Of a stretch of 64,000 nucleotides of DNA, positions 5,718 through 60,957 are shown piece by piece. The DNA is from Heteronotia binoei (lineage: Eukaryota). The DNA is taken from positions 89,962,001-90,026,000 of the forward strand of contig NC_083223.1 in assembly GCF_032191835.1 (NCBI RefSeq), given 5' to 3'. Numbering within the stretch: position 1 is the stretch's first letter; every line of letters begins with the position of its first letter. The notes beneath the pieces are model-generated. The model searched no databases. It was not told where the DNA came from and saw only the letters and a list, made by a program, of their open reading frames with translations. The translations under genes and the position numbers were made by a program.

Positions 5718-5913
5718 AGGGCCTTTTTTGGTAGAAAAAGCCCAGCAGGAACTGGTAGAAAAAGCCCAGCAGGCATATTAGGCCACACCCCATTGTTCCA
5801 CATAGGGCTTTTTTGTAGGAAAAGCCTATCAGAAATTCATTTACATATTAGGTCACACCCCCTGACACCAAACCAGCCGGAACTGCATTCCTGTGCGTTC
5901 CTGCACCAAAGCC
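5718..5913. mobile_element. MITE of the CAGGGCTTTTTTGTAG family
   Basis: Motifs GAAAAAGCCCAGCAGGAACT, CATATTAGGCCACACCC and CCAGCCGGAACTGCATTCCTG recur at 9.65-9.86, 10.5-10.7 and 39.8-39.96 kb. Confidence 0.7.
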
Positions 5914-9645: not shown

Positions 9646-9862
9646 GGAGGGTTTTTTTGTTTAAAGAGCCCAGCAGGAATTCATTTGCATATTAGGCCAC
9701 ACTTCCTGATATCACCATTGTGATCATCATTGACATTACCTCCCGACACAAGGCTTTTTTGTAGAAAAAGTGCATAAGGAACTCATTTGCATATTAGGCC
9801 ACACCCCTGACACCAACCCAGCTGTGTTGTGTTCCTGTGTATTCCTGTTTTTAAAAAGCCCT
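9646..9862. mobile_element. MITE of the CAGGGCTTTTTTGTAG family (two tandem modules)
   Basis: AGGAA(T/C)TCATTTGCATATTAGGCCACAC occurs twice. Confidence 0.7.
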
Positions 9863-10511
9863 TATGTTTTTGAGCTTCATTTGATATTGTGGTGAAAAGT
9901 TGATTTTGCATTCACAGAATCTTCTTTGCATCTCCGCTCTCAGTACTAATTGTCTTCCTAATGTGAAGATGTAAGGAATGTTAACCATCATCACCTATGC
10001 TTGTTTTTAATATGTACAGCGGGATCAGTATCATGAAGAAGTATTTCAGCTGTACTCTTTATATCTGGTATTTGTTTAAATTTGTATAATAGATCACAAT
10101 GTTTAGCAGGATGGGGGAAAGAAGTTAGTATTTTCATTTGAAGTTAGAGGCTCCAAAAGTTTTTTTTTTAATTGTCTACATTATTTATACTTTCCTGATT
10201 CAAACCATTTTAAATAAAAGAGAAAAGTCAATACATGTCTTAGTACCATACAGATTTAAAGAATGAGTTCATTTTTATGCTGTATGCCCTAAGTTGTTCC
10301 GTGTCCAATAATACTTGAAAATTATGTACAACAGAGGTTGGTGGTTGCAATATAGCATTATGATAAATAGATTATATAATAATCTGTTTGATGACATCAT
10401 CCAACAGAAATTGTTCATGAACTGAGAGTAGCACAGTCAATTTCTGGAATTTGTTTTGCCCCATCCCAGATCTTTCAATATGTGATTTGAGTGAGGATCT
10501 TTAAAATGAGT

Positions 10512-10693
10512 CAGGGCTTTTTTTGTAGCAGGAACTCCTTTGCCTATTAGGCCACACCCCTCTGATGTAGCCAATCCTCCAAAAGTTTACAGGGCTCTTA
10601 GTACAGGGCCTACTGTAAACTCTTGGAGGATTGGCTACATCAGAGCCATGTGGCCTAATATGCAAAGGAGTTCCTGCTACAAAAAAAGCCCTG
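10512..10693. mobile_element. Palindromic MITE (182 bp)
   Basis: The left arm CAGGGCTTTTTTTGTAGCAGGAACTCCTTTGC..TAGGCCACA is mirrored by TGTGGCCTAATATGCAAAGGAGTTCCTGCTACAAAAAAAGCCCTG. AGT flanks both sides. Confidence 0.8.
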
Positions 10694-15690: not shown

Positions 15691-17240
15691 ATCTGTCTGT
15701 CTGTCTGTCTCTTTTATTTTATTTTAATTATTTTATTGCATTTATATCCTGTCCTCCCCTAACGGGCTCAGGAAGGCTAACAACAGTTAAGACAACATAA
15801 TGTTAAGATCAAGGTACAATAAAATCATTAAACATTTCGGCAGTTCATGCAATTTAAAATATGTAGTACAGTTTCAGGCTCACTCACTGGGATCCAGATG
15901 TCGGGTTTTAATTCTTATTGAGAGCTGCATATAATGATGTTATAAGATAGGGGTGGCCAACGGTAGCTCTCCAGATGTTTTTTGCCTACAACTCCCATCA
16001 GCCCCAGCCATTGGCCATGCTGGTTGGGGCTGATGGGAGTTGTAGGCAAAAAACATCTGGAGAGCTACTGTTGGCCACCCCTGTTATAAGATGTTATTTG
16101 GCACTCTGGATTTGTACTGGGATGGTTCAGGTGTCAATGCTGTGGGATGGTGGAATAGTTTAAACAATTCTGTCTTACAGGCCCTGTGGAATAGTGGCAA
16201 GTTCTGTAGGGCCCTGATGTTTTTGAGGAGGGTGTTCCACATGGCAGGGACTGTCACTAAAAAGGCTCTTGCTCAAGTGGTGGCCAGCCATGCTTCTTTT
16301 GGCCTGGGGATCATGATTGGAGTGCTCTCTGAGACTCATATGGGGAGAGGCAGTCCCAGAGGTAGACTGGATCCAGGCCATATAGGGCTTTAAAGGTCAT
16401 AACCAGCACCTTGAAGCGAATTCGAATGCCACAGGCAACAATTCAGGTGTAGGTTGAATGTGCTCCCATAAAGGTAGCTCCATTAGCAACCTAGCTGCTG
16501 CATTTTGCACCAGTTGCAGCTTCTGAATCTGCATCATGGGCAGCCCCATGTAGGGGGTGTTACATTAGTCTATTCTCGAGGTGACCATTGCATGGATCAC
16601 TGTTGCCAAGTCGCTGCGTTCTGTGTATGGGGTCAACTGCCTTATCCATCTAAGATGATAAAATGCAGATTTGGCAGTGGCTGCTACCTGGGGCTCCATA
16701 GTTAATGAAGGCTCCGGGAGCACCCCTAGGCTCTTGACCCTAGAAGCTGGCGCTAAAGGCACCCCATCAAAAGTCAGTAGAGGGATCTCCCTTTCCAGAC
16801 CGCTGCGGCTTAAGCATAGGACCTCCATCTTTGTTGGATTCAATTTCAGTTGACTCTGCCTGAGCCATTTCACTATGGCTTGTAATGCCAGGTCCATATT
16901 TTCTGGGGCATAACCAGCCCGCCCCCCCCCCCATCAATAGATACAGCTGGGTGCATTTGCATACTGATGGCATCCCAGCCTGAATCTCCAGACAAGGGGG
17001 CAAGGAAGTGCATGGAAATGTTAAATAACATTTGGGAGAGAACTGCCGCTTGGGGCACACCACATACAAGTGGGTACCTTCGGGACGACTGATCCCCTAT
17101 AGCCACCCTTTGTCCCCAGCCATGGAGAAAAGAGGTAATCCATTGAAGGGCAGACCCCTGTATCCCCATGTTTGTGAGGTGGTGAGATAGTAGCTGGTGG
17201 TTAACTGTATCTAATGTAGCCAACAGATCTAATAGCAACA
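15691..17240 (-). mobile_element. Decayed L2 LINE 3' portion (RT plus 3'UTR)
   Basis: ORF pieces 16873-17250 (LLLDLLATLDTVNH, CGVPQAAVLSQMLFNI) and 16565-16897 (LKLNPTKMEVL...VKSLGV) are homologous to the 868-aa L2 ORF2. L2-type tail TTTATATCCTGTCCTCCCC..GGCTCAGG next to (TCTG)n. Confidence 0.85.
15948..16083. mobile_element. Hairpin hAT MITE (136 bp) inserted in the L2 3'UTR
   Basis: Near-perfect ~55-bp arms (AGGGGTGGCCAAC.GTAGCTCTCCAGATGTTTTTTGCCTACAACTCCCATCAGCCCC and its reverse complement). Perfect 8-bp TSD TTATAAGA (15940-15947, 16084-16091). Confidence 0.92.
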
Positions 17241-17330
17241 ACACTGCCAAACTGCCTCAGTCCCAGATGTCCATTAGTGTGACCAGTACCATCTCCGTCC
17301 CATGTCCCAGGTGGAAGCTGGGATGAAATG

Positions 17331-17513
17331 NNNNNNNNNNNNNNNNNNNNNNNNNNNNNNNNNNNNNNNNNNNNNNNNNNNNNNNNNNNNNNNNNNNNNN
17401 NNNNNNNNNNNNNNNNNNNNNNNNNNNNNNNNNNNNNNNNNNNNNNNNNNNNNNNNNNNNNNNNNNNNNNNNNNNNNNNNNNNNNNNNNNNNNNNNNNNN
17501 NNNNNNNNNNNNN
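17331..17513. other. Assembly gap (N run)
   Basis: Run of N. Confidence 1.
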
Positions 17514-32165: not shown

Positions 32166-35100
32166 TTATTTATTTATTTATTCATTCATTCCCCACCTTC
32201 ACCACCAAAGCAGGCTCAGGGCGGCTTACTGCATAAAATCCCAGAAACAATAAAATTAGTAAGTATTAAAAATACACACTCGGTAATAAAATAACAATAA
32301 TTAAAACAGTTAAAACAATTAAAACAGAAAACCAGACTATTAAATTGGTGCTATTCTGATGGCAACGACCTTCTTCCACAGCTCTTAAATACCGGTGCCA
32401 ATCAATTGTATGCCAGTCAGAAGAGGACAGTCTTGCAGGCCTTGCGGAACTGCACCAGGTTCTGTAAGGCCCTCACTTCATCTGGAAGTTTGTTCCAACA
32501 GCAGGGGGCTATGATTGAGAAGGCCCTGTCTCTAATTGATTTCAATCGGGCCTCCTTCAGCCCGGGGATTACTAGCAGATTAAGTGATCCCTATCTAAGT
32601 ACTCTCTGGGGAACATGTGGGGAGAGACAGTTCCTAAAGTAGGCAGGTCCTAGGCCATATAGGGTTTTAAAGGTAATAACCAGCACCTTGTAACGAACCT
32701 GGTAGACTATTGGCAGCCAGTGCAGTTCCTGGAGTCCCTGGTGAATGTGCTCCTGCCTGGGAAGCCCCAATAACAGCCGGGCGACCGCGTTCTGCACTAG
32801 CTGCAACTTCCGGGTTTGGCACAAGGGCAGTTCCATGTAGAGGATATTACAGTAGTCCAACCTCTAGGTGACCATTGCGCAGATCACTGTTGCCAGGTCA
32901 CCATGCTCCAGGAAGATGGAAAAACGTGGATTTAGCAGTGGCTGCTATCTGGGCCTCCAGTAGTACCCCAAGCTCTTGACCTTGTGCGCTATTGCTAGTG
33001 GTGCACCAACAAAGGGCGGTAGGGGGATTTTCCTTTCAGGACCACCACGACTCAAGCAGAGGACCACTGGATTAAGCTTCAATCTACTCAACCTAAGCCA
33101 TCCAGCCACGGCTTGTAGCACCAGGTCCAAATTTTCTGGGACACAGTCAGGCCGGCCGTCCATCAGTAGATAGAGCTGGGTGTTATCAGCGTACTGGTGA
33201 CAACCCAACCTATACCTCCAGGAAATCTGGGCAAGGGGGTGCATGTAGATGTTGAACAACTTCGGGGAAAGCACCACCCCCTGAGGCACCCCGCAATCAA
33301 GCACGTGTCTCCGGGACAGTTCACCCCCAATCACCACCCTTTGTCCCTGACCATTGAGGAAAGTCATTGCAAGGCCAGCCCCTGAATCCCTGTGTCGGCG
33401 AGACAGTGGGTCAGCAACCAATGGTCAACTGTATCAAATGCTGCCGATAGGTCCAACAACATCAGTACCACCGAACCGCCTTGATCCAGATGCCGCTGGA
33501 GGTCACCAGGGCGACCAGCACTGTCTCCATCCCATGGCCTGGGCAAAAGCTGGACTGGTGGGGTCTAGAACGGAAGCGTCATCCAGAAAGTTCTGTAACT
33601 ACAGCACCACTGCCTTCTCAATAATTTTACCCAAAAAGGGTAAATTCGAGACCGGCCGGTAATGTGCCAATTCGGCCAGGTCTAGTGTCGATTTTTTCAG
33701 GAGAGGGCGGACAACAGCCTCTTTAAGAGGTGTTGAAAAATGGCCTTCCATAAGGGATCTATTCACAATATCCCATATAGGATATCTGAGCTCCCTCTGG
33801 CAAGCTTTAATAAGCCAGGAGGGGCAAGGGTCCAGATAACAAGTTGTAGGTCATGCAGTAGAGAGTATCCTGTCAACTTCCTCTAGGCTGAGTGTATTGA
33901 AGCAATTCAGAACAAAACCAGAAGACAGGCATGGGGCCTCGAGTTCACATACTGTCTCCAATGCAGCGGGGAGGTCGTGGTAGAGCGACGAGATCTTGTC
34001 TGCAAAAAAGTTCACAAAAACCTCACAGCCAATCTCCAATTCCTTAGAATTTGGCCTGCCTTGTAGCAGTGTTGTAAGGGTCTGAATTGTGTTGAACAAT
34101 TGTGCCAGGCGCGAAATTGCAGACGCAATCTTGGCCGCAAAGTAAGTTTTCTTTGTGGCTTTGACTGCCATCTCGTAGGACCTCATAAACTCTCTATAAG
34201 GTATTCTAGTTGCTTCATCTCAAGAACACCACCATTGCCTCTCTAGCTGTCTGAGTCCTTGTTTCATCTGCCGCAACTTCAGGTTATACTATAGCACTAG
34301 CTTAGAGCGAGGGTGCAGAGGACGCTGAGGTGGTGAAGTGCATGGACTCTTATCTGGGAGAACCAGGTTTGATTCCCCACTCCTCCACTCGCACCTGCTA
34401 GCATGGCCTTGGGTCAGTCATAGCTCTGGCAGAGGTTGTCCTTGAAAGTGCAGCTGCTATAAGAGCCCTCTCCAGCGCCACCCACCTCACAGGGTGTCTG
34501 TTGTGGGGGAGGAAGGTAAAGGAGATTGTGAGCTGCTCTGAGACACTTCGGAGTGGTGGGTGGGATATAAATCCAATATCTTCTTCTCATCGATGGCTCT
34601 GGAGAGTCTGTCATACCAAGACACCGTCAGGTCATCCAGGGAAGCCAGGAATCTCATAGAGCCATTTGGAATCCCATAGAGCCATTTGGAACCGTTCCGG
34701 GTCCATCTGGCTCTGCGGGCAAGCTAAAATATGCTCACCGCCTAAACGGGCTTGAGGTGGGACATCCACATGAGCCTTGAGGGCATAGTGGTCCGACCAT
34801 GGCACTGCTTCATCATTAATACAGTCCACTAAAACTCCCGCCACAAATATCAAGCCTAGTATGTGCCCCGCCTGGTGAGTAGGCATTGTAATAATTTGAG
34901 AGAGTCCCAGTGTCACCATGGATGACACTAGGTCCATCGCCTGACTGGAGGTTGCATCATCGGCATGAACATTGAAGTCACCCAGGATCAAAAGCCTTGG
35001 GTACTCCAATGCTCAGCCTGTTACAGCCTCCATCAGGGATGGTAAGGCGCTGGCTGGTGCATTAGGCGGACGGTACACCAGCCAGATTGCCAACCCCTCT

Positions 35101-36150
35101 CCAACGTCTCACGCCAGACCAGCACATTTAATGCCCTTAATCTCTGGGGCTGGAAGAGCCCGGAAGGAGTAAGCCTGTCATATGAATAGAGCTACCCCTC
35201 CCCCCCCCGCTTGTCTATGATTGGTGAAAGACTGAGTATCCTGGGGGAGCCATCTGGGAGAGAGCTACAGTCTCACCATCACGCACCCAGGTCTCAGTCA
35301 CGCAAGCCAGGTCCACATCCTGTTCAAGCAAGAACTCCCAAAGGATTGAGGTCTTATTATTTATGGACCTGGCATGACATAACACCAATGAGGGAGGTGA
35401 GTAATTCAGCCTGACCCCTCTACCTGCCATTGTCGGGATGGGTCGCAGACTGAAAGGGGGCTGAGCACTATCATGCCTCAGCCTCCTTCCCTTATAATTC
35501 TGTCTATTCCCACCATCATACCTTCCCCTCCCCAGGAGTACTGGAATTCCCAGGCTGGTCATCCCCTGCTGGTCTCCATCACAGCCTCAGACCAGGTGTA
35601 AATAGGCCGGGCTTGTCACCCTACTCTGGGTGTTAAACAGCTCCCCAACCCTCTCTTCTCACACCAATCAATCAATTTCCTAATTTAAACTAACCTGCTA
35701 ATAATTTAATCTAATAGTTAATTTAATCTAAAACCCCACCCCACAATCTCCCCTTTAATTAATTAGCTAAAAATAATTTAATTAGTTCTAATGGCTCCTT
35801 AATTGTAAAAAACCCTCCCAGCCAGTTACCTTCCCTAATTAATTTGCCAGAAATATAAAATTCATCAAATAGCCAATCAATTAACCAATAATCCAAAATT
35901 AATTAACCAATAAAATTACATTAACAATCAATTTAGCAGTCAGCAATTCCCTTTGTGCATTGGCAGTTAAGATCAGGTTAGAGTTAAAATGATGCTGGAT
36001 AAAAACACTGCAATGCTGAAAGTGCAAGGTGTTCTTAAAGTGCAGAGTGTTCTTAAAGTGTGGTTGTTCTTAAAGTGCGGTAATGCTGTCCGAACCCCTT
36101 TCAAGTCTGGAGTCTTCTTACTGAGGTAGACCTCGGTATACAAAGGTGTG
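32166..36150 (-). mobile_element. Near full-length but decayed L2 LINE (same family as the 55.4-58.2 kb copy)
   Basis: Frameshifted ORF2 pieces: EN N-terminus LCHARSINNK...CVTETW (35215-35562), GDFNVH/THQAGH/SDH (34632-35009) and RT CHQYADNTQLYL (32945-33421). L2 3' tail at ~32170-32230. Confidence 0.9.
34330..34587 (+). mobile_element. SINE (Squam3-like) nested in the L2
   Basis: Matches 26512-26798 apart from the first ~15 nt. The L2 sequence resumes on both sides. Confidence 0.9.
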
Positions 36151-48402: not shown

Positions 48403-51242
48403 GGGTGTCAAGCGCTACTGTTTAATGGTCCAACCTCCGCAGAGCCCATAACAACCTTGGAGGTGGGGCCTGAAAGGGATCTGATAACCTTCTTGCTAGA
48501 TCAGTCAAAATAAAGGGAATGAGGGAAACAAAGGGTAGAGCGAGGGTCATTGGGGTGATGGGCCCTAAACCAGAGGTATCTGTCTTGGCACCCCTAAAAG
48601 TGTCTCTGCCTTGGCAGTCAGGTGATTTATTCCATGATTTTTTATAGATGCCCCAGAGCAAAATTAGCTTACTGGGAAGAGATTTATGGGGAAAACTCAG
48701 AATGTGGACTGGGATGGTAGGGAACAGGTGTGTAGTGTTTCAAGGGATGTTAAGGGAAGAAGACATTCAGGGTATCGACCCTTGTGTCCGGGCAGCTCCA
48801 GGAAATCCTGGACTCCTACATATTGCACCAGTCACTGTGACACTAAAGAACCCTAAGGTAGTGCAAGTTCGGCAGTACCCAATACCATGCGAGGCTGAGG
48901 AAGGGTTAAAACCAATGATTACAGAATTATTACAAGATGGTCTGATTGAGGAATCGGTTTCCTCCTACAGCACTCCCATCCTGCCAGTTAAGAAAGTGGA
49001 TGGGACTTATAGAATGGTCCAGGATTTAAGAGAAATTAATAAGATAGTGGCCCCAAGGCCCCCATTGTCCCTGATCCTTACACCATCCTCAACGGTATTC
49101 CCAAAGACCATAGAGTATATAAAGTAATAGATTTGAAATCGGCTTGTGTTCCCCTAGCAGAAGCTGCCAGGGCCCTGTTTGCCTTCCAATGGCCACACCC
49201 CCATACGGGAATTGTAACCCGCTTTCAATGGTGTGTACTCCCCCAGGGATACACAGAGTCCCCCACAGTATTTGGGGAAATACTAACACAAGTATTGAAA
49301 GAATAATAGCCCCCTTCAAAGGTTGCCCTGACACAATACGTAGACAATCTTTTGATAAGTGGGGAGAAGGAGAAGGTCAGAGAGGGCTCAGTGAGTCTTC
49401 TGAATTTTCTAGCCCAAAAGGGGTTGAGGGTAACGAAGAAGAAAGTGCAGTTCTGCCAGCACCAAGTGAAGTATGTGGGGCATTTATTAAAGGAGGGAAA
49501 GAAACTCCTGAATCCCGAAAGGGTACAGGGTATCCAGGACCTCCCCCTCCCCCTCACCAAAAGGCAGCTACGAGGATTTTTAGGTTCAGTAAATTTTTGT
49601 AGCACCTGAATAGAGGGGTTTGCAGCCATGACCTTCCTCCTTAGCAGCAAATTAAGGGATGAGTGTCCTGACAGACTGGAATGGACCAGGGCTGAGGAGG
49701 GGGCGTTCCAGAAATTGAAATCTAGCCTCCTCTCTGCCCCTGCTTTGGGACTTCCCAGCATGCAAAAGCCTTTTCACTTGCAGATAACGACCCAAAAGGA
49801 GTTTGTGATTGCAGCCATGACCCAGAAAAAGGGGGGAATGGAACAACCTGTGGCCTACTTTTTCCGCATGCTAGATCCCATTGTACAGGGATGGCCCCCA
49901 CTATCTGCAGGCTTGTGCATCCACAGCCCAGGCAGTGAAAATGGCCAGGAAGTTTGTATGGCAAGGGGTCCTAATTGTACATTCTCCCCACCAAATACAA
50001 AGCATTTTAACTCACACCGCCAGGCAATGGATGATGGATGCCTGACTTCTTCAATTAGAGGCGATCTTTTTGGAATGCCCTGATCTGATTCTGGCAACCT
50101 TGGAAACGATCTAGTCCGGTGTTAGGGCTATCCGCAGGAACAAATGAGAGAATGGGGCTGGAACATTGCTGCGATTTTGGATCGCAGACCAAAATCAGGA
50201 AAGACTTGGAGGAGACCCCCATTTTGGGGGCAACAGATGTATTCGTAGATGGATCATCCAGGGTGGTTGACGGAAAACGATACAGAGGATATGCCATAAT
50301 AGAAGGGGGAGGACAAGAAATCGGGATCCTTTCCCCCATCCATGTCAGTCCAAATGGCCGAATTGGTGGCGGTTCAGAGAGCTTTAGAGCTATTCAAAGG
50401 GGAAAGTGTAAACATATATTTAGACTCTAAATATGTTTTTGCATGTATTTGGGAAAATTTGGGAGGAAAGAAGGCTGTTGAGCTCCCGAAGAAAATCTCT
50501 GGCCCACGTAGGCATTATCAAAAGGCTTTAGGAGCCTTGCAGGGACCGGCCGAGGTGGCCATAATTCATGTTAAAGGACACCAGAAAGGATCCAGTCATG
50601 AGGCACAAGGAAATCGATGGGCGGATGAGCATGCCAAGTTGGCCGCCTTAGGGCCACCGGCCACAACAGCCTTTTTGGCCGCCCTCATCCCCCAAGGACT
50701 GGATCCAGAACCCCCTTTTGTGTACACTCAGAGGAAAAGAGAAAAGGCTCATGCCCAGGGGGCTTGGGAGGAAAGAGGAAAACTCACACTCTCCGATGGG
50801 CGCTCCTGGCTCCCAGAGGGAGTGACCCGGGAGGTCTTAAAGACTTTGCATGAAAGTGAGCATTGGGGAACTGAGGCCTTGGTGGGTGCCTATCTTCAGA
50901 GATTTGTAGGATGCCGGGTGTGGACAATAGTCAAGCAACTGACCCAGCATTGCTTAACATGCCAGAAGGTGAATAAAAGGGGAGGGCAAATAGAACATGT
51001 TGGGGGCCAGCCAATTTCAGTAAGGCCTTTTCAGAGCTTACAGATAGATTTTATATATCTGCCCCCAGTTGGTAGGCTCAAACATTGCCTAGTAATACTG
51101 ACTTTCTCACAGGATGGGTCGAAGCTTTTCCAACAGCCCAAGCTACGGCCCTGGTGGAGACAAAGATACTTTTGGAATATGTAGTCCCTAGGTTTGGGGT
51201 CCTGGAAAGGATGGACTCTGATAGGGGCCCCACTTCACTGGC
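48403..51242 (+). pseudogene. pol: ERV pro-pol (protease, RT, RNase H, 5' half of integrase), disrupted and 3'-truncated
   Basis: Protease FLLD(deleted)...LLGRDL; RT QYPI..TPILPVKK.DGTYRMVQDLREIN, LPQG.TESP, QYVDNLL (49334-49354); RNase H FVDGSS, AELVA, IYLDSKY, HVKGHQ; IN H..H..C..C, LQIDF, WVEAFP, SDRG, after which homology stops. Confidence 0.93.
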
Positions 51243-51934: not shown

Positions 51935-53297
51935 AGAATGATCCCTTGTAGAGACTTTACACTTCATCATTGCTCATTCATAATAAAGTAAATAAACAAT
52001 TACATGCTTACCACCACTGTACTGATTTGCTCCCCCAATAAAAATTTTCTGACAAGACAATTTTCTTGTCTCAAACACTCAAAAATGTTTGCCCTTTGAA
52101 CATTCAAAATTTCTCATAACTGGACGGAATGTTTACGGATATGAACTCTTACCATTCTTTCCCTATTCTCCCATCCCTGGTTCATCATTTTTGTTACATG
52201 ATTTAATAAAAATGTTGTTTAATACTGCTGGGGTTGTAGGAAAGTTGTGTGGTTTGTCTCTTTGTTCTAGCCTTAACCTGCTTGACCCTATGTTAATTGA
52301 TGCGATCCAGATCACAAATGCTTGGTGCATGTGCATTCTTGCATTGCTGTGTCACAGCCTTGTCCTGTAAATCCAAAGCACTTTACAGTGAGGGTAAAAT
52401 GTACTTGGTTTGCATTTCTAATGTTAAAGTATTACTTACTTTACCTGGCCAACTACTACCAATATTCTCAACTGTATAATATTGACTCATTCTCATACTG
52501 CCACCTGGGGACTAATGTTTGATCCTGTACATTATAAGTATACTCATACATGCATAATGTCACCAACTGATAATGCTGTCAGTTGCACAGGTGTAAAAGC
52601 AGTACATGAATTCTAATTATTTTAGATGATGCATGACCTGATAACCCAGGGGTTATTCAGTCAGAGTGTGAACAGGTGTCAATAATTTCTACATAGCTAG
52701 CTGCTATGCCGAATGCCACCACTGTGCAAGTACAAAGGCACTCAGATTTAGAGCCAACAGATATTGTCAGCCAGATAATTTCAATTTTCAAATAGCTGTT
52801 TTCCAAACACTGAATTATAACACCCAATCCTCTTCTCTTTTATCAAAAGACAGCCATTTTACAGCTATTCTAGTAGCCAAGCACCTGGTCAGAAATCTGA
52901 TTTGTAAAAGTTTCTCGTATGTCTATTTGCAGAGTATGTTTTCTAACAAGATACATTAATTATTCACACTAGTCTAGAAAAAGGTGATTTGTTCAATGGC
53001 TGCATCACAAATGTTGCTTTTCTGTTACCTCAGGAAACAAGCACCGCCACCCCTACTGTCTTTCAGCTATCTGAATCTCAAGGCTGGATCTTTGCAACCA
53101 GCATCTGAATACTTGTCAGTGGTCCCCAACACTGGATCGGAAACCACAGATGCAGAACTGAACAGGTAAGTAGATGCTGCCAGCTTTAATAACAAATTGC
53201 TAAATAACAAATTGCTAGAATCCAAACTCTCTCCCTCAAGAATTTAGGCCCCTGATCTCTCCAGCAAGTTATTGATACCTGCAACACTGGCTGTAGT

Positions 53298-53424
53298 TAG
53301 GGTTGCCAAGTCCAATTCAAGAAATATCTGGGGACTTTGGGGGTGGAGCCAGGAGACATTAGGGGTGGAGCCAAGATCAAGGCTGTGACAAGCATAATTA
53401 AACACCTGGGGATTGGCAACCCAA
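53298..53424. mobile_element. 127-bp internal-deletion derivative of the 11762-12271 hAT MITE, inverted
   Basis: Both ends match the ends of the 510-bp element (AAGTCCAATT...GACAAGCAT joined to CACCTGGGGATTGGCAACC). Confidence 0.85.
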
Positions 53425-53439
53425 TCAGCAGTAGCACCT

Positions 53440-54240
53440 CCACGCTCAGGTGTACCGGCTTGGGGCGGGCCGTTGGGGACCCTGAACTCTTCCTACGTGC
53501 TTTTTTCACGCGTCGCCCTCAAGGGCACGGGAGAAGCGCAGCAACATGCACAATCCCCGTTCACCCTCTGGCATTCCCACGCCTCCCTCTCTCTCTCCCC
53601 TTTTGCAACTGGGGGGCGAGATCCAGCCCCACTGCCCCTTCCCTACTGGACGGGGGGGGGGGGTCTCTCTTACCTGCCGTCTCCTCCCAGCTCGCTCGCC
53701 TTCGCCCCCCGCCCTGCATCAGCCGCCCCGCCGCCTGCAGCCATTTTCCGCTTCTCCCTCAGCTGTTCCCCATGTGGGAACGAAGACGACTCACAGAAGC
53801 CCGGGTCCTGCTGCGGGGCATGGCGGGAAGCATAGCTCCCCGTCCGGAGCTCAGCCCCACAAGCCAATGGGAGGCGAGCGGCCCAGAGAACTACAAGCCT
53901 GGAAAGCTGCCGTGCTAGGCATGCTGGGAGTTGTAGTTCTTTCTAAAGGTGGGGAGAAGAATCGCAGAGCGGGGAAGGGAAGGAAGCGCAAAGGCTCAAG
54001 GCTGTTCCAAAAGGGGCGCCAGGCGGGGGTGGGTTGTTCTTCGCAAGGCCTCCCTGGCACTTTTTTTTTTTTGCCATTGCTTTTTGCAAAAGGCCGCCCT
54101 GCCTCCAAATGCCCCAAGAGCGAGTGGCACCAAAATGGCGCCATTTCCCCCCCCGGTTCCGAATTTTGGGAGGGCGGGGGAGGAGGCTTCTATATCTGGG
54201 GGCCCCCGCCAGGGCGGGGGAGTTGGGACCCCTAGCTGTA
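53440..54240. promoter_or_regulatory. CpG-island promoter with ZNF143/THAP11, CCAAT and ETS/YY1-like motifs
   Basis: GCATGCTGGGAGTTGTAGTT (53919-53938) reads AACTACAACTCCCAGCATGC on the minus strand. A degenerate inverted site lies at 53889, CCAAT at 53864, and GCGGAAAATGGC at the candidate start codon. High CpG density. Confidence 0.7.
53674..53744 (-). CDS. Candidate first coding exon of an unidentified host gene (MAAGGGAADAGRGAKASELGGDG, phase-2 end)
   Basis: AAAATGG start context inside the CpG island, followed by a canonical donor CAG|GTAAGA at 53674/53673. The protein was not recognised. Confidence 0.45.
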
Positions 54241-55360
54241 GTCCAACCCATATATATTTCTGCAGAATATTTCTTTGAATAGCTTTGAGGCTGTTTTATG
54301 ACTTTTAATAATGAGATGTTTTCCAGTTACTGAAATAATATTAAAATATATTTTAAGAAGCTATGCTGTTGCAAACTAACTTATCGGATCATAATGCGCC
54401 TCATCCCCATGGACTTTGTTTCTGTACTGTGGCCTTCGAAACAGCAGTCGGTGGCTGGAGTGCGAGTTGTACACTGGTTGAGAAAAACAGTAGGGGACTT
54501 TGTGATTGATGATCTCTGCACTCTCCAGGAGCTATCACTGCATTAATGGAAATGATTGCATAGGATCTGAGAGATAAAAGGATAATCTCAGCAGCACAAA
54601 CAAAAAATACAGCAGAAAAGAAAATCAGAAATAACTTTACAGTTTTCTTTTAGCCATTCTTTAAATAATAATAAAAAAGACTGCTTCTTTTTTTGGCAAA
54701 CAGAACAAATTTACTTACGATTTTGTCTCAGGATACCGGATGGAAGTAAAACAGTTGTGAAGAATTTTATTTCTCTCTGCATATCTGATTTTACTTTAGC
54801 AGCTGTTAAATGGTAAGTAATAATGGCTCATTTTGTTGTGGGTATCTCATGAATGCCATCCTAGGGTCCTGCAATACGTGGATGTCACTGCAGTAAATAT
54901 AAAAGGCATGAAGCAGTTTTGACTTCCATCTGAGAAAACAAACAAACTACAAATATATTCAGATACGTGATTTGGAACAAAGAATCAATAATCACAGAAG
55001 TAGGTAAAGATTCTTGAGATCCCCCAGAGGCTGTCCAGGTGCCTGTAGATTATGGTGTCTAGAGATCTGGCAATTCTGCTTGATCAGAGGGCCAATCACA
55101 TCTTCCAAGGTTTTTGCAAAGGTAACAGATGGCACTGTTGTGAATCAGAAGAACTCACATGATAGCTTTTAAAAACAATTTTTGTTCCAGCTAACTGAAT
55201 GGGTGAAGGGAAGAGACCTAGATGCTAGTCTATAGATCTTCCCCTTGTTATGCAAATAGCTAGTAAGTACTATGCAGGGATGTCATCAACTGGAATATAT
55301 TACACAAGTAACAGTCATATGAAATACTGGCAGATGGTTGTGGACTGCTTGAGATAATTA

Positions 55361-58228
55361 GATAGATAGATAGATAATTTTATTTATATCCCGCCCTCCC
55401 CGCCGGAGCAGGCTCAGGGCGGCTAACAACATCATTCAATTTCCCTTATACAAAAGACAAGGTTACATTAACATTAAACATTAAAAAATTCTGATAAGTT
55501 TAAAATCACTTAATTAAATTGATAAAAGTGCTAATGCTAATTGTGCTTTTATAATGGCGGTAATCATTAGCAATTTCTTTCTTCGTCAGCGAAAGCCAGT
55601 CGGAAGAGGAAGGTTTTGCAGGCCCTGCGGAATTGTTCAAGGTCCCGCAGGGCCCGCATTTCCTCTGGAAGTTGGTTCCATAGGTTCGGGGCTACAGAGG
55701 AGAAGGCCCGGTTACGGGTGCATTGCAGCTTCACCTCTTTTGGTGCGGGGGTGGTCAACAAGTTTTTTCCAGCTGACCTCAGTGCTCTCTGGGGTTCGTA
55801 TGGGGAGAGACGGTCCCTAAGATAGACAGGTCCTCGACCATATAGGGCTTTAAAGGTGATGACCAGCACTTTGTAACGAATCCGGTATGTAACTGGCAGC
55901 CAGTGCAGCTCGCGCAGCCCAGGCTGTATGTGCTCCCATTTAGGGAGCCCCAACAACAGTCTGGCCGCTGCGTTCTGCACCAGCTGCAGCTTCCGGGTTC
56001 GGTACAGAGGCAGCCCCATGTAGAGGGCATTACAGTAGTCCAGTCTCGAGGTGACCGTTGCGTGAAGTACCGTTGCCAGGTCTTGGCGCTCTAGGAAGGG
56101 AGCCAACTGCCTTGCCCGCCTCAGGTGAAAAAAGGCTGACTTGGAAGTGGCTGCAATCTGGGCCTCCATTGATAAAGAAGGCTCCAGTAAGACTCCCAGA
56201 CTCCTAACCTGGTGCGCCGCTTTCAACGGCGCCCCGTCGAAGACCGGAAGAGGTATTTCCCCTTCCCGAGCGCCCCGACCCAGACAAAGGACTTCTGTCT
56301 TCGCTGGATTCAATTTCAGCCGGCTCCCCCTCAACCACATTGCCATATCCTGCAAGGCCCGGTGTAAATTTTCAGGGACGCAGCCAGGCCGGCCGTCCAT
56401 CAGCAGATAGAGTTGGGTGTCATCTGCATATTGGTGGCACCCAAGTCCATATCTCCTGGCAATCTGGGCAAGAGGGCGCATATAGATATTGAATAACATT
56501 GGTGAGAGGACTGCCCCTTGAGGCACTCCACAATCCAGTGTGCGCCTCCGGGACCGCTCGCCACCAATTGCCACCCTTTGTCCCCGATCCTCGAGGAAGG
56601 AGGAGAGCCATTGTAAGGCAGACCCCCTCACCCCTATATCGGCGAGGCGGCGGGTCAGTAGCCGATGGTCGACCGTGTCGAACGCGGCCGACAGATCTAA
56701 CAGCATCAGCACCGCCACACCGCCCCGATCCAGATGCCGTTGGAGATAATCTACCAGGGCGACCAGTACTGTCTCCGTCCCATGACCCGGGCGAAAGCCG
56801 GACTGGCAAGGGTCTAGGATGGAAGCGTCATCCAGAAAGCTCTGCAACTGCGACGCCACTGCCCTCGCTATCATTTTACCTAAAAACGGTAAATTAGAGA
56901 CCGGTCGGTAGTTTGCCAATTCGGCCGGGTCTGCTGTACTTTTTTTCAAGAGGGGTCGGACCAAAGCCTCTTTCAGGGATGATGGAAAGCGCCCCTCCGA
57001 GAGGGATCTATTTATGATGTCCCGTAGAGGACATTCAAGCTCCCTCAGGCAGGATTTAATTAGCCAGGAGGGGCATGGGTCCAAATCACAAGTTGTGGGG
57101 CGCGCAGAGGAGAGAATTCCGTCAACTTCCTCCAGGCTGAGCGGGTCGAAATGATCCAGAGTTAAATCAGAAGACAGGCAAGGGGCCTCGGGCTCATGTG
57201 CTGTATCTAAGGTGATGGGCAGGTCCTGGCGGAACGACATGATTTTGTCTGCAAAAAATTTCGCAAAAGCCTCACAGCCTATTTCTAATTCTCTGACGTT
57301 TGGTCTGCCCTGGGGCAGTGTAGTTAAATGTCCAATTATTTTAAACAATTGTGCCGGGCGCGAATTTGCAGACGCAATCTTGGCCGCGAAGTACTTCTTC
57401 TTCGCGGTCTTGACTGCCATCTCATACGACCTCATAAACGTTCTGTAGGATGTTCTCGCCGCTTCGCCACGAGTGCGCCGCCACTGCCTCTCTAGTCGTC
57501 GGAGTCCTTGTTTCAACCGGCGTAGCTCCAGGGTATACCAGGGAGCCAGCCTTGAACGAGGGCGCAGAGGACGTCGGGGTGCGATCTCGTTGATTGCCTC
57601 AGATAGCCGGTCTTGCCAGGCATCAACCAGGGCATCAAGGGAATCGCAAGGGGGCCAAGGATCCCGAAGAGCTGTTTGGAACCGTTCCGGGTCCATCAGG
57701 CTCCGCGGGCGAGCCAAAATAGGCTCTCCGCCCTTACAGGGTTGTGGTAGCGTCTCCATACGAGCCTTGAGGGCTAAGTGATCCGACCATGGTATCGCCT
57801 CCGTCGCGATTTCGTTCACTTTAATCCCGGCCGCAAAGATCAGATCTAATGTGTGCCCAGCCTGATGTGTGGGAGTTGTAACAAATTGGGAGAGTCCCAG
57901 TGTCGCCATGGAAGACACTAGGTCCATCGCCTGAGTGGATGCCGCGTCATCGGCGTGGACATTGAAGTCACCCAGGACCAGAAGCCCTGGGTACTCCAAC
58001 GCCCAGCCGGACACCGCCTCCATCAGGGATGGTAAGGCGCTGGCCGGTGCGTTAGGCGGACGGTACACCAGCCAGATCGCCAACCTCTCCCCGACATCCA
58101 ACACAAGGCCGACACATTCAACACCATCGATCTTTGGGGCTGGGAGGGCCCGGAAGGAGTAAGCCTCCCGCATGAATACCGCCCCCCCGCCCCCCCGCCC
58201 GCTAATCCGCGACTGGTGGAAGACCGAG
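55361..58228 (-). mobile_element. Young 5'-truncated L2 LINE
   Basis: (ATCT)n tail at 55361-55375, L2 3' end GAGGGCGGGATATAAAT, CpGs retained, and a possible TSD TAATTA (55355-55360, 58229-58234). Confidence 0.95.
55567..58173 (-). CDS. L2 ORF2: APE endonuclease (N-terminus missing) plus reverse transcriptase, 868 aa uninterrupted
   Basis: APE motifs VYRPP, GDFN, TH..GHTLDL and SDH. RT motifs YRPVSNL, QSGFR, LDLSAAFDTVDH, GVPQGAVLSP and YADDTQLY. Confidence 0.95.
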   Translation of the reverse strand: MREAYSFRALPAPKIDGVECVGLVLDVGERLAIWLVYRPPNAPASALPSLMEAVSGWALEYPGLLVLGDFNVHADDAASTQAMDLVSSMATLGLSQFVTTPTHQAGHTLDLIFAAGIKVNEIATEAIPWSDHLALKARMETLPQPCKGGEPILARPRSLMDPERFQTALRDPWPPCDSLDALVDAWQDRLSEAINEIAPRRPLRPRSRLAPWYTLELRRLKQGLRRLERQWRRTRGEAARTSYRTFMRSYEMAVKTAKKKYFAAKIASANSRPAQLFKIIGHLTTLPQGRPNVRELEIGCEAFAKFFADKIMSFRQDLPITLDTAHEPEAPCLSSDLTLDHFDPLSLEEVDGILSSARPTTCDLDPCPSWLIKSCLRELECPLRDIINRSLSEGRFPSSLKEALVRPLLKKSTADPAELANYRPVSNLPFLGKMIARAVASQLQSFLDDASILDPCQSGFRPGHGTETVLVALVDYLQRHLDRGGVAVLMLLDLSAAFDTVDHRLLTRRLADIGVRGSALQWLSSFLEDRGQRVAIGGERSRRRTLDCGVPQGAVLSPMLFNIYMRPLAQIARRYGLGCHQYADDTQLYLLMDGRPGCVPENLHRALQDMAMWLRGSRLKLNPAKTEVLCLGRGAREGEIPLPVFDGAPLKAAHQVRSLGVLLEPSLSMEAQIAATSKSAFFHLRRARQLAPFLERQDLATVLHATVTSRLDYCNALYMGLPLYRTRKLQLVQNAAARLLLGLPKWEHIQPGLRELHWLPVTYRIRYKVLVITFKALYGRGPVYLRDRLSPYEPQRALRSAGKNLLTTPAPKEVKLQCTRNRAFSSVAPNLWNQLPEEMRALRDLEQFRRACKTFLFRLAFADEERNC

Positions 58229-58262
58229 TAATTACTGAGGATTACTGGGTGAATCTCTTCAG

Positions 58263-59123
58263 TTATGCTAGCACTACTGATTGTGCCTCTAACTGTTCCT
58301 CCCTAATTTTTTCTTTTTGCCAATCCACACTGTGTGTTTTGAGGAACTCCTCCGCTTTGACAGGAGAATCTATCCTAAACCTGTTATTGACATACGTAAA
58401 TGTCAAACCCTCTGGAACCAACCACCTATATGTGATTCCTTTTCTCTGAAGAATCGAGGCCAGTTGTCTATAATCTCTTCTCTTCGATCTGATCAGCCAG
58501 GGGATATCCTTCATAACCTTGATCTTAATTCCTTTAATGGTTAACTGTTGGTCTCTAGCCTCCCGCCATACCTTCTCTTTAACCATCCTACGAACAAATC
58601 TCACATGAACCTCTCTGTTGAGACCATTCCTTCTCGCGTGTGTAGTATTGACTCTATATACCCAGTCTATTTCTTTTTCAGAATCAATCTGCTCTATTGA
58701 CAAAAGATCAGCAAATGCCTCCGCCATTAATGTCACTAAGTTTTCATTCCTTTCCTCCGGTATATTTAAAAACCGCAAAACATATTCAGCTTGGCCCATT
58801 TCCATTTGCATACTTTTTGTCTCTAATTTATCCTGATTTCCTTCAAGTTCTTCTATTTTGCCTTCCATTAATTTAAGTTTGCCATCTATAGACTTTGTGA
58901 CTCTAACTACTTCAGTTATATCTTTTCTAGTTTCCCCAAATTTATCATCCAGACTATCCATCTTGACCACCACACCCTCCATTTGTTTTGTCAAGGAATC
59001 TTTCAATTGGTTTAATGCTTCTAAAAAATTCATTTGAATATCTTTTAATGCGTCCTGCGACAAGGCGGCTCCCACTGCCTTAGGTTGGCCTGGCGAAAAT
59101 TTTACCTTCCCTGCCTGTGACAT
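58263..59123 (-). CDS. L1 ORF1p (coiled coil, RRM and CTD), 286 aa from the first ATG
   Basis: Heptad-rich N-half; RRM-like LRFLNIPE..IDWVYRV..REVHVRF..KEKVWREAR; CTD KVMKDIP..RRDY..LQRKGITYRWLVPEGL..DSPVKAEEFL. This is the L1 ORF1/Transposase_22-type architecture. The track ORF starts at a TTG (59144). Confidence 0.85.
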   Translation of the reverse strand: MSQAGKVKFSPGQPKAVGAALSQDALKDIQMNFLEALNQLKDSLTKQMEGVVVKMDSLDDKFGETRKDITEVVRVTKSIDGKLKLMEGKIEELEGNQDKLETKSMQMEMGQAEYVLRFLNIPEERNENLVTLMAEAFADLLSIEQIDSEKEIDWVYRVNTTHARRNGLNREVHVRFVRRMVKEKVWREARDQQLTIKGIKIKVMKDIPWLIRSKRRDYRQLASILQRKGITYRWLVPEGLTFTYVNNRFRIDSPVKAEEFLKTHSVDWQKEKIREEQLEAQSVVLA

Positions 59124-60220
59124 TATCTTAAATTTAGTAACCAATTATTCTTATATTCCTTATTATTGCTTCTACGTTCAGAACCATATATTCAAGAACT
59201 CTACAATGCCCTTCCAGCGTCTTAATACTGTGGTAATTGAATCGCTTATAATGTTAGCTTGCCAACTGATCTAAGATCCACAAGCCCACAAGCCCACTAA
59301 GTACAGTCCTCCCCCTGCGGTTGAGAGCACCACACAGATTAACGTGTTCTTGCACCTTATCACTTATTCAGCCTACTCAAAATGTCACTTCTCAACTGCA
59401 CAAATGGATATAACAACCAGTATTGAGAACAAAACAAACAAACAAAGCGACAGCGTCAGATGAGTCTTCCAGTCTGTCCTGTTTACAGTCTTTCAAATCC
59501 CTTCCATCGTGAAGCTGATCCGCAACTTCCTGGTCTTCCCCGTCTTTCAGCGGACAGCTCCTTGGCCAGCGCAATGCCAGTTCACAGCAGTAAACCAATT
59601 ACCGGCAGCCCCGCACGTCAGTTATAGGAGCTTGCAGCGTCCTGACGTACAACGTACGACGTGAAGCGTTTCCTCCCTGGGCTATTCCGTTTAACCCTTA
59701 CTGGCTTGCTTTGTCAACTCCTCGGGAGGACCTGGAATAAAAGTTGCTTCTCCCGTACTTCTGCCGACCACCTTCCCCTCTTGGGAGCACCTCACACGAT
59801 TCAGGCGTTGCAATATTCCCCCACAGCTTCCTACCGCCCACGCCAGCTGCTTTCGCCGCTTCCGCCTTCGACCGGGCGTTCCTATCGCCACTTCTAGTCT
59901 TAGCTCAGTTTCACTGAATTCAGCGTTTCAGGATTCAACAAGCTCTCCCCGTTCGTCAGCCACAGCTCACCTCCGAAAACCGGTGGCTAGGACTAATTCG
60001 CCGTTACGCGCTTCCAACCTCAGGTGTTTTGAAGAAAGGTAGAACACTTGGAGACTGCTGACTCGAGCCCCCACTATTCTCCACGCTCTTCTTACACACC
60101 CCTCCTTCGACAGGAGGTGATGCAGACCCTAGGGCCCCCCTGAAAGGTAGGAAATTCGGCACGCTTTGAGGAGCTCTCTCAAAACGCTACCGCACCGCCC
60201 TGCCGGAACCGGAAACCCCC
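58276..60220 (-). mobile_element. L1 5'UTR plus ORF1-only insertion (half-L1-like) with a 16-bp TSD
   Basis: Direct repeat CAGTTATGCTAGCACT at 58260-58275 and 60221-60236. The 5' end begins GGGGGTTTCCGGTTCCGG, followed by a ~1.1-kb CpG-containing leader and ORF1. No ORF2 and no poly(A). Confidence 0.85.
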
Positions 60221-60805
60221 CAGTTATGCTAGCACTGAGGAGCAAACTATACATTGGGTTTTCTTATATGTTCGTTTCTTAGATTTTTTTTTTCTTCTTC
60301 AAATATAGTTGCTGGGGCTGCTTTTTAATGGAAGACAATGCTGTGGAAGAGAACAGAGTGTGCGTGTGGAGTGGACTTTTAATCTTTTCACTGTTTTTAT
60401 GCTGAAATAAACCGCTACTGAACTACTTTTACCTTTCTCCAAGGGAGATATGTGGAAATCTGTAAGTTTCCCCAGGTGTGGTAAAAGCAGATTATTTTAA
60501 TTTTTTTCAGAGAGAAACAAGAAGAAAAGAAAGAGTCAAAGAGCCTGTCTCTCTCCACATCAATCTCCTCCTTGAAAAGGCAGTATAGCACCTCAGTTGG
60601 AAAGAAAGCAGAAAAAAACACAAATTTGGGCAAAGAAGATAATGTACAATTCAGTTGACCCTCTATGTCTATCTGTCAGATTGGGATATATTAGACAGAA
60701 AAAATATTAAGTAGTAACTTGATGACTACACCAGTTTGATGTACTGGTTAAGTGTATGGACTCTAATATGTGAGAACTGGGTTTGATTCCTCACTCCTTC
60801 ACATG

Positions 60806-60874
60806 TAAGAACATAAGAACATAAGAGAAGCCATGTTAGATCAGGCCGATGGCCCATCCAGTCCAACACTCTGT
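60806..60874 (-). mobile_element. Very short CR1 3' tail insertion
   Basis: AAGAACATAAGAACATAAGAGAAGCCATGTT.GATCAGGCC..TGGCCCATC.AGTCCAACACTCTGT is the reverse complement of 29535-29604. Confidence 0.9.
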
Positions 60875-60957
60875 ACCTGCTGAGTGACCTTGGGTCAGTC
60901 ACAGTTCTTGAAAGAGCTGCTCTCTAGAGCAGTTCTTGAAAAAGCCCCACCTCACAG

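What the first reader, a model, noticed from the sequence alone, without database searches (positions are those of the whole stretch)
58260..60236. Tailless ORF1-only L1 insertion whose stop codon comes from the target site
Seen in sequence: a 1,945-bp insert holds an L1-type 5' end, a ~1.1-kb leader and an intact ORF1p. It is bounded by a perfect 16-bp direct repeat and stops inside the ORF1 C-terminal tail (...GCACAATCAGT). There is no ORF2, 3'UTR or poly(A). The final codons and the TAA come from the duplicated target (AGTGCTAGCATAA). Established: target-primed reverse transcription normally leaves 3'-complete, 5'-truncated, poly(A)-tailed L1 copies at TTTT/AA sites, and known half-L1 (HAL1) elements are ORF1-only. 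This insert is 5'-complete, 3'-truncated, tailless, and its target does not fit TT/AAAA. Inference: it is either a new tailless non-autonomous ORF1 family, internal priming through AGT/TCAGT microhomology (possibly by a non-L1 endonuclease), or a microhomology-mediated deletion after insertion.
Basis: partly seen in the sequence, partly recalled or inferred. Interest (0 to 1): 0.78.

Follow-up and report, generated by a model that had tools for sequence, protein, structure and literature searches.

The report
Tailless front-half L1 retrocopy in a lizard
This is a young copy of only the front part of an L1 jumping gene (leader plus its RNA-binding gene), inserted without the usual poly(A) tail. 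It is most likely a one-off product of a known irregular copying route, not a new kind of element.

Summary
A perfect 16-bp direct repeat (58260-58275 and 60221-60236) brackets a 1,945-bp insert whose sense strand is the minus strand.

**What the insert contains**
- A 1,097-nt CpG-rich leader. It starts with five G then TTCCGGT, which resembles published lizard L1 5' ends.
- An intact 286-aa ORF1. Profile, fold and structure searches show it is a true L1 ORF1p (coiled coil, RRM, CTD).
- No ORF2, 3'UTR or A-tail. The last three codons and the TAA lie in the repeat.

**Most likely origin**
- This is a recent, dead-on-arrival L1 retrocopy.
- Target-primed reverse transcription began inside the L1 mRNA, or at a broken 3' end of it, at a nick that does not fit the L1 consensus.
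- That route is the known "internal priming / tailless retropseudogene" route, already reported in anole.

**What was not supported**
- No evidence for a tailless ORF1-only family could be obtained. There is one copy in the window, and no close relative in any collection I could search.
- A later deletion, or a single event shared with the 5'-truncated L2 29 bp downstream, is unlikely.

The scan has noted similar ORF1-only or 3'-truncated L1 copies elsewhere in this genome (for example s1-345459, s1-330227, s1-340804). Whether this recurrence is significant is the only open point of interest.

The parts
60221..60236 (-). Upstream copy (in element sense) of the 16-bp target-site duplication
   Evidence: Exact 16-mer that occurs only twice in the window.
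60207..60220 (-). 5' terminus of the retrocopy: GGGGG followed by TTTCCGGTT
   Evidence: Read directly. The core TTCCGGT matches the published 5' consensus of lizard clade-1 L1 (GACTTCCGGTG) and zebrafish L1 (GGACTTCCGGTT) in PMC5381506. The extra Gs are typical of full-length L1 5' ends (own knowledge).
59124..60220 (-). Leader (5'UTR): 1,097 nt, 50% GC, 55 CpG, no tandem repeats
   Evidence: This matches lizard clade-1 L1 5'UTRs, which average about 1.3 kb and about 56 CpG with no tandem duplication (PMC5381506).
58263..59123 (-). ORF1 of 286 aa from the ATG (293 aa from an upstream TTG at 59144), including the stop. An intact L1-type ORF1p
   Evidence: - ORF list.
- Pfam Transposase_22 at E 1.2e-3, 19.6 bits, below the 22.4-bit cutoff.
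- 502 HMMER relatives, best 37% identity.
- Profile of 17 relatives hits human L1 ORF1p 2ykp at E 2e-14.
- AF2 model with pLDDT 83.8: helix 23-112, RRM 115-205, CTD 209-265.
- Foldseek top 10 hits are all human L1 ORF1p, E about 1e-11.
58276..58278 (-). 3' breakpoint: the last L1-derived bases (...CAATCAGT) end at 58276, inside the disordered C-terminal tail of ORF1p
   Evidence: Read directly. The tail after the conserved ...EEFLK is 21 L1-coded residues, against 23-75 in relatives. Model residues 270-286 have low pLDDT.
58260..58275 (-). Downstream copy of the 16-bp target-site duplication. It supplies one base of a Val codon, then Val-Leu-Ala and the TAA stop
58231..58259 (.). 29-bp spacer of unassigned (presumably target) DNA between the duplication and the neighbouring L2
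   Evidence: Homology to a second L2 copy in the window starts exactly at 58230.
55360..58230 (-). Neighbouring GC-rich L2-type LINE, treated as a separate insertion. It is 5'-truncated inside the endonuclease, has an open 868-aa ORF (55567-58173), and ends in an (ATCT)n tail
   Evidence: - Pfam RVT_1 at 1.6e-36.
- Only the C-terminal part of the endonuclease is present (Exo_endo_phos profile positions 136-225 of 225).
- Tail read.
- Compared with the L2 copy at about 35.9-32.4 kb, which retains the N-terminal endonuclease motifs.

Best explanation
This is a single, recent, dead-on-arrival retrocopy of the 5' part of an ordinary autonomous L1 of the lizard long-5'UTR type.

**Proposed sequence of events**
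1. An L1 mRNA was used as template for target-primed reverse transcription at a staggered break 16 bp wide.
2. The inferred first-strand nick is 5'-AGCACT/GAGG-3' on the + strand, which is not the TTTT/AA type.
3. cDNA synthesis did not start on the poly(A) tail. It started inside the RNA, in the region encoding the ORF1p C-terminal tail, or at the 3' end of a broken L1 mRNA.
4. Synthesis ran to the capped 5' end.
5. Second-strand synthesis and fill-in produced the 16-bp duplication.

By chance the open frame continues for three codons into the target and meets a TAA.

**Shown:** the anatomy, the L1 ORF1p identity, 5' completeness by resemblance to published 5' ends, and the absence of a tail and of ORF2.

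**Inferred:** the RNA intermediate, the nick positions, and the internal or irregular start of reverse transcription.
For: - **Unique repeat.** The perfect 16-bp direct repeat is unique in the window and exactly brackets the insert. Its length is in the usual range for L1 target-site duplications.
- **5' boundary at an L1 transcript start.** The insert begins with a G-run plus TTCCGGT, then a 1.1-kb leader with 55 CpG. This matches published lizard clade-1 L1 and points to an RNA intermediate, not a DNA-level duplication.
- **True L1 ORF1p.** It is confirmed by sequence profile, model and fold search. The nearest retrievable relative has the normal order of ORF1, a 42-nt spacer and ORF2.
- **No normal 3' end.** There is no A-tail and no polyadenylation signal within 260 nt of the end. 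Published vertebrate L1s, lizard included, end in AATAAA plus poly(A) (PMC5381506). So this 3' end is neither normal nor prematurely polyadenylated.
- **Signs of youth.** The duplication is perfect, the ORF is intact and the CpGs are undecayed (CpG observed/expected 0.7-1.25 over most of the first 700 nt, 0.45 in one 100-nt bin). The open ORF therefore needs no selection to explain it.
- **The route is documented.** L1 internal priming gives 3'-truncated insertions (review PMC4859970). Tailless retropseudogenes with TSDs are primed internally with 2-18 nt of complementarity, and were also found in the green anole (PMC5322556).
- **A precedent in this genome.** An earlier follow-up reached the same reading for another locus (s1-345459). 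This is a lead, not independent support.
Against: - The parent L1 sequence downstream of the breakpoint is unknown, so complementarity between the primer (...GCTAGCACT-3') and the RNA cannot be shown.
- The visible AGT/TCAGT similarity stands in tandem at the junction rather than merged.
- The breakpoint is not in an A-rich stretch, and the target is not TT/WAAAA as in mammalian tailless retropseudogenes.
- Copy number in the genome could not be measured, so "one-off" rests on absence of evidence: one copy in 64 kb, and nothing in protein, metagenome or run searches.
- A second young LINE lies 29 bp away in the same orientation. For two independent events this is a coincidence of roughly 1-3% (my rough estimate).
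Confidence: 0.7

Rival explanations
1. It is a member of a non-autonomous, ORF1-only L1-derived family (HAL1-like) whose master copy ends here and which is mobilised in trans without a poly(A) tail.
For: - The architecture is ORF1-only, with an intact ORF1p and an intact 5' end.
- Earlier notes of the scan report several ORF1-only L1 elements with TSDs in this genome. One follow-up claims a family of about 200 copies (s1-340664). I did not check these.
Against: - There is no second copy in the window.
- No protein more than 37% identical exists among 1.84 billion representatives, and there is no hit in metagenomes.
- HAL1 elements carry a poly(A) tail (PMC5322556). This one has none.
- The stop codon comes from the target, so the coding end is not a fixed family feature.
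- L1 trans-mobilisation normally needs a 3' poly(A) (own knowledge).
Confidence: 0.08
2. A normal L1 insertion (5'-complete, with ORF2, 3'UTR and poly(A)) later lost everything from the ORF1 tail to the end of the poly(A) through a deletion.
For: Deletions in L1 are common. Long elements are said to be selected against and prone to recombination in reptiles (PMC5381506).
Against: - The deletion would have to end exactly at the poly(A)/TSD boundary, leaving no A and an untouched 16/16 duplication.
- No microhomology is consumed at the junction (AGT|AGT stands in tandem).
- The target (TC/AGTG) is not the A-rich site expected for a poly(A)-primed canonical insertion.
Confidence: 0.06
3. One complex event made both neighbours. 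The L2 reverse transcriptase copied L2 RNA, then switched template to an L1 mRNA, giving an L1-ORF1 / L2-ORF2 chimera. This includes the other first reader's "reconstituted chimeric LINE" (s1-322604).
For: - The two young LINE pieces lie 29 bp apart in the same orientation.
- There is no polyadenylation signal between them, so an L1-promoter transcript could read into the L2 ORF.
- The L2 reading frame is open from within the L1 3' end.
Against: - The 16-bp duplication brackets the L1 part alone, not the composite.
- 29 bp plus one repeat copy of non-LINE DNA separate the two parts.
- The L2 copy lacks the N-terminal two thirds of its endonuclease (compare), so the pair is not an autonomous element.
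Confidence: 0.05
4. It is an assembly artefact: a collapsed or chimeric join at the repeat copies.
For: None was found. It is listed only because no reads of this genome could be laid.
Against: - The nearest N runs are more than 40 kb away.
- Both junctions are clean.
- The structure (TSD, element, TSD) is biologically coherent.
Confidence: 0.03

Closest known systems
Internal-priming L1 insertions and tailless retropseudogenes (Srikanta et al. 2009, cited in PMC4859970; Schmitz et al. 2004 / Noll et al. 2015, PMC5322556)
   Same: It is 3'-truncated relative to the source RNA, has no A-tail, is flanked by a target-site duplication and is made by TPRT. The class has already been detected in the green anole.
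   Different: - Here the source RNA is the L1 mRNA itself and the copy is 5'-complete.
- The breakpoint is not A-rich, and the target is TC/AGTG rather than TT/WAAAA.
- Complementarity between primer and RNA could not be checked.
HAL1 (half-L1) elements of mammals (Bao & Jurka 2010, cited in PMC5322556 and PMC4859970)
   Same: It has a 5' region plus ORF1 only, no ORF2, and is flanked by TSDs.
   Different: - HAL1 is a multi-copy family with its own 3' end and poly(A).
- This copy has no tail.
- Its stop codon comes from the target.
- No family could be shown.
Endonuclease-independent L1 insertions (Morrish et al. 2002; Sen et al. 2007, cited in PMC4859970)
   Same: It has a non-consensus integration site, 3' truncation and no poly(A).
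   Different: Those insertions usually lack target-site duplications and are often 5'-truncated as well. This one has a perfect 16-bp duplication and a complete 5' end.
Lizard clade-1 L1 families (L1_AC, Boissinot & Sookdeo 2016, PMC5381506)
   Same: It has a long CpG-rich non-repetitive 5'UTR, a TTCCGGT motif at the 5' end, and an A-rich coding strand.
   Different: - The published families are full-length, with ORF2, a 3'UTR, AATAAA and poly(A).
- The ORF1p here is at most 37% identical to anything retrievable, so its lineage within lizard L1 is not placed.

Membership tests
L1 (LINE-1) ORF1p | Coiled coil, then RRM, then CTD architecture | tested here: met
   The AF2 model (pLDDT 83.8) has helix 23-112, RRM 115-205 and CTD 209-265. 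The Foldseek top 10 hits are human L1 ORF1p, E about 1e-11.
L1 (LINE-1) ORF1p | Sequence membership (Pfam Transposase_22 or solved L1 ORF1p) | tested here: met
   - The single sequence scores 19.6 bits, below Pfam's 22.4 cutoff.
- A profile of it with 16 relatives hits 2ykp/2yko/2ldy/2w7a (L1 ORF1p) at E 2e-14 to 7e-10.
- 10 of the 17 members hit Transposase_22.
- The best ESM Atlas clusters are L1 ORF1 / L1TD1-type, score 0.96.
Canonical L1 TPRT insertion | 3' poly(A) tail after AATAAA | tested here: not met
   There is no A-run at 58276 and no AATAAA or ATTAAA within 260 nt.
Canonical L1 TPRT insertion | Target site of TT/AAAA type | tested here: not met
   The inferred site is ...CTC/AGTGCT in element sense.
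Canonical L1 TPRT insertion | Target-site duplication of about 7-20 bp | tested here: met
   A 16/16 bp repeat, unique in the window.
HAL1-like ORF1-only family | ORF1 present, ORF2 absent | tested here: met
HAL1-like ORF1-only family | Own 3' end with a poly(A) tail | tested here: not met
   The HAL1 definition is taken from PMC5322556.
HAL1-like ORF1-only family | Many copies sharing the same termini with different TSDs | not testable with these tools
   The genome is not searchable here. There is one copy in the window. No relatives were found. The only run served was a foreign metatranscriptome.
Tailless retropseudogene / internal priming | 3'-truncated, tailless and TSD-flanked | tested here: met
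Tailless retropseudogene / internal priming | 2-18 nt complementarity between the target site and the source RNA at the breakpoint | not testable with these tools
   The parent L1 sequence 3' of the breakpoint is unavailable. Only AGT (or TCAGT) recurs, and it stands in tandem rather than merged.
Endonuclease-independent L1 insertion | No target-site duplication, often with a target deletion | tested here: not met
   A perfect 16-bp duplication is present.

The most novel reading that the evidence does not exclude
The recurrent 5'-complete, 3'-truncated ORF1-only L1 copies noted across this squamate genome (this locus plus s1-345459, s1-330227, s1-340804, s1-345600 and others) may not be unrelated accidents. 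They could reflect a lineage-specific property. One possibility is a preferred internal entry site for reverse transcriptase near the ORF1/ORF2 boundary. Another is use of L1 mRNA by a poly(A)-independent enzyme such as the co-resident L2. Either could seed tailless ORF1-only families.
Probability: 0.12. Interest if true: 0.6.

Novelty: new member of a known kind. Interest (0 to 1): 0.3.

Why it matters
By itself this is one more example of irregular L1 retrotransposition: a 3'-truncated, tailless copy with a target-site duplication.

Its modest value has two parts:
- It is a clean, very young example in a reptile. The source RNA is the L1 mRNA itself, and the product still encodes a complete ORF1p.
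- The scan keeps finding such copies in this genome. If a genome-wide census showed an excess of them, or clustered breakpoints, it would bear on how half-L1 (ORF1-only) families are born. It would also bear on how strictly squamate L1 enzymes need poly(A).

Tried and rejected
**Searches for other copies or the full-length parent**

| Search | Result |
|---|---|
| blastn and tblastn within the window | only the locus itself |
| word-index protein search | none |
| exact-protein look-up | none |
| exhaustive HMMER search | best hit 37% identity |
| metagenome scan by protein | none |
| metagenome scan by exact 23-mer at the breakpoint | none |
| findings index by sequence and by relatives | blank |

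**Reads**
- The only run served was a metatranscriptome of another organism.
- Its contigs match the L2 at 85-95% and match a SINE-like repeat.
- A single 279-nt piece matches ORF1 at 87%.
- This says nothing about copy number, empty alleles or expression.

**Ideas rejected**
- *The upstream 16-mer is a remnant of an older L1.* The 300 nt upstream show no similarity to the ORF1 3' region beyond chance 6-9-mers.
- *The L2 interrupted a full-length L1.* There is no L1 ORF2-like coding downstream of the L2 or anywhere else in the window.
- *ORF2 starts inside the retained ORF1 tail, as in overlapping lizard L1s.* No ATG-initiated endonuclease-like frame is present.
- *Premature polyadenylation.* There is no signal and no A-tail.
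- *Tandem monomers or known RNA families in the leader.* None were found.

Srikanta et al. 2009 (PMC2784234) is not held, so it is cited only through the review.

No contig taken for human was met. No N run was touched. The stretch given to read laying was 3,901 letters.
Full report
**Observation**

The stretch reads as described. The 16-mer CAGTTATGCTAGCACT stands at 58260-58275 and again at 60221-60236, and nowhere else in the window. It cannot be extended by one base on either side.

The whole 64-kb window holds only 12 exact direct repeats of 16 bp or more at a spacing of 100-5000 bp. The other 11 belong to repeat arrays at 3.3-4.1 kb and 5.7-10.5 kb. The pair is therefore not a chance match.

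Between the two copies lie 1,945 bp (58276-60220). Their sense strand is the minus strand, and they are single-copy in the window.

**Anatomy of the insert, in element sense**

- **5' end.** It begins GGGGG TTTCCGGTT. Boissinot & Sookdeo (PMC5381506) give GACTTCCGGTG as the conserved 5' extremity of lizard clade-1 L1, and GGACTTCCGGTT for zebrafish L1. The TTCCGGT core is shared.
- **Leader.** It is 1,097 nt to the ATG, with 50% GC, 55 CpG and no tandem repeats. The published lizard clade-1 figures are about 1.3 kb, about 56 CpG and no tandem duplication.
- **ORF1.** It runs 59123-58263 and encodes 286 aa. An in-frame TTG lies seven codons upstream.
- **Pfam.** The single sequence gives only a sub-threshold Transposase_22 hit of 19.6 bits against a 22.4 cutoff.
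- **Relatives.** The exhaustive HMMER search found 502 relatives, the best at 37% identity.
- **Profile.** A profile of the protein with 16 of those relatives hits the solved human L1 ORF1p chains at E 2e-14.
- **Model.** The AlphaFold model has pLDDT 83.8. It shows a long helix (residues 23-112), an RRM (115-205) and a CTD (209-265).
- **Fold search.** Foldseek ranks the human L1 ORF1p trimer first, at E about 1e-11.

So ORF1p is a genuine and structurally complete L1 ORF1p.

**The 3' end**

- L1-derived sequence stops at ...CAATCAGT (58276). This is 21 residues after the conserved ...EEFLK, in the low-confidence tail.
- Relatives have tails of 23-75 residues there. Some codons are probably missing, but how many is unknown.
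- The frame continues GT|A GTG CTA GCA TAA into the repeat copy.
- There is no A-run. No AATAAA or ATTAAA lies within 260 nt. No ORF2-like start sits in another frame. No L1 ORF2-like coding exists anywhere in the window.
- Published vertebrate L1s, lizard ones included, end in AATAAA plus poly(A).
- The nearest retrievable relative (locus L001) has the ordinary order of ORF1, a 42-nt spacer and the ORF2 endonuclease.

**Surroundings**

- Twenty-nine bp downstream (58231-58259 is unassigned DNA), a GC-rich L2-type LINE begins in the same orientation.
- Its homology to a second L2 copy in the window starts exactly at 58230.
- It has an open 868-aa ORF with RVT_1 at 1.6e-36. Only the C-terminal third of the endonuclease profile is present. 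It ends in an (ATCT)n tail near 55360.
- The other L2 copy keeps the N-terminal endonuclease motifs that this one lacks.
- The 16-bp repeat brackets the L1 piece alone.
- The upstream flank (60237-60724) is unique in the window and shows no similarity to the ORF1 3' region.

I therefore read the two LINE pieces as separate insertions. The pair is not a reconstituted autonomous element, contrary to the other first-stage note on this stretch (s1-322604).

Their closeness is a coincidence of roughly 1-3% by my rough estimate. I cannot explain it, and a single complex event keeps a small probability.

**Mechanism**

- The left boundary falls at an L1 transcript start with extra Gs, and the duplication is 16 bp. 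Both point to target-primed reverse transcription of an L1 RNA.
- The cDNA strand is the + strand, so the primer was ...GCTAGCACT-3'. The first nick was 5'-AGCACT/GAGG-3', which is unlike TTTT/AA.
- Synthesis began not on poly(A) but within the ORF1-tail region, or at a broken 3' end there. It then ran to the cap.

This is the known irregular route. Internal priming gives 3'-truncated L1 insertions (review PMC4859970). Tailless retropseudogenes carry TSDs and are thought to be primed internally through 2-18 nt of complementarity. Outside mammals they were found only in the green anole (PMC5322556).

Three things differ here:
- The breakpoint is not A-rich.
- The target is not TT/WAAAA.
- The visible AGT/TCAGT similarity stands in tandem at the junction instead of being merged, so it is not evidence of annealing.

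The decisive datum is the parent sequence just 3' of the breakpoint, and it could not be obtained.

**Rivals**

- **A tailless ORF1-only family.** This would be the interesting reading. It is not supported, because no second copy or close relative was found in any accessible resource. It is also not refuted, because the genome itself could not be searched. HAL1 elements have poly(A). This element does not, and its stop codon is target-derived.
- **A later deletion.** It would need an endpoint exactly at the poly(A)/duplication boundary. It would also need an originally canonical insertion at a non-canonical, non-A-rich site.
- **Misassembly.** This could not be tested. The only sequencing run served was a foreign metatranscriptome.

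**Age**

The duplication is perfect, the ORF is intact and the CpGs are undecayed. CpG observed/expected is 0.7-1.25 over most of the first 700 nt, with one 100-nt bin at 0.45. All of this fits a very recent insertion, so the open ORF1 needs no selective explanation.

**Context from the scan**

Several first-stage notes in the same genome describe ORF1-only or 5'-intact, 3'-truncated L1 copies with duplications.
- One follow-up called its locus a one-off tailless retrocopy (s1-345459).
- Another claimed a HAL1-like family of about 200 copies (s1-340664).

I could test neither. They are leads. Together they make a genome-wide census worthwhile.

**Verdict**

- The finding is a new member of a known kind.
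- Interest is 0.3.

Noticed in passing
window 55360-58230 (-): A young L2-type LINE copy. It has an open 868-aa ORF (55567-58173), is 5'-truncated inside the endonuclease and ends in an (ATCT)n tail. Its reading frame stays open upstream through the 29-bp spacer and the 16-mer into the L1 3' end, in a different frame from ORF1. No polyadenylation signal separates the two, so an L1-promoter transcript could read through into the L2 ORF.
   Followed up: partly
window 32408-35900 (-) and 16156-17316 (-): Two further L2-type copies, 50-74% identical at protein level to the 868-aa ORF. The first retains the N-terminal endonuclease motifs but has stops and frameshifts. The second abuts an N run at 17331-17513.
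   Followed up: partly
window 60725-60908: A SINE-like short repeat with copies at about 29.5, 26.5, 34.3, 2.1-2.7 and 45.4 kb of the window. Related contigs reach extremely high summed depth (1.5-2 x 10^5) in the one metatranscriptome served, which comes from another organism. There is no Rfam match.
   Followed up: partly
window 50342-51184 (+): A 280-aa ORF with an RNase H domain (5.6e-13) and an integrase zinc-binding domain (6e-07). It is a fragment of an LTR retroelement or endogenous retrovirus pol. It was only described, nothing more.
   Followed up: no
window 3323-4101 and 5773-10560: A tandem array with a period of about 150-270 bp at 3.3-4.1 kb. Also a dispersed short repeat containing GCATATTAGGCCACACCCC at 5.77, 9.69, 9.79 and 10.5 kb.
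   Followed up: no
window 53200-54250 (+): A GC-rich island (up to 64% GC) with overlapping ORFs of 193 and 229 aa that have no Pfam match. It could be a CpG island, an exon or a GC-rich repeat.
   Followed up: no
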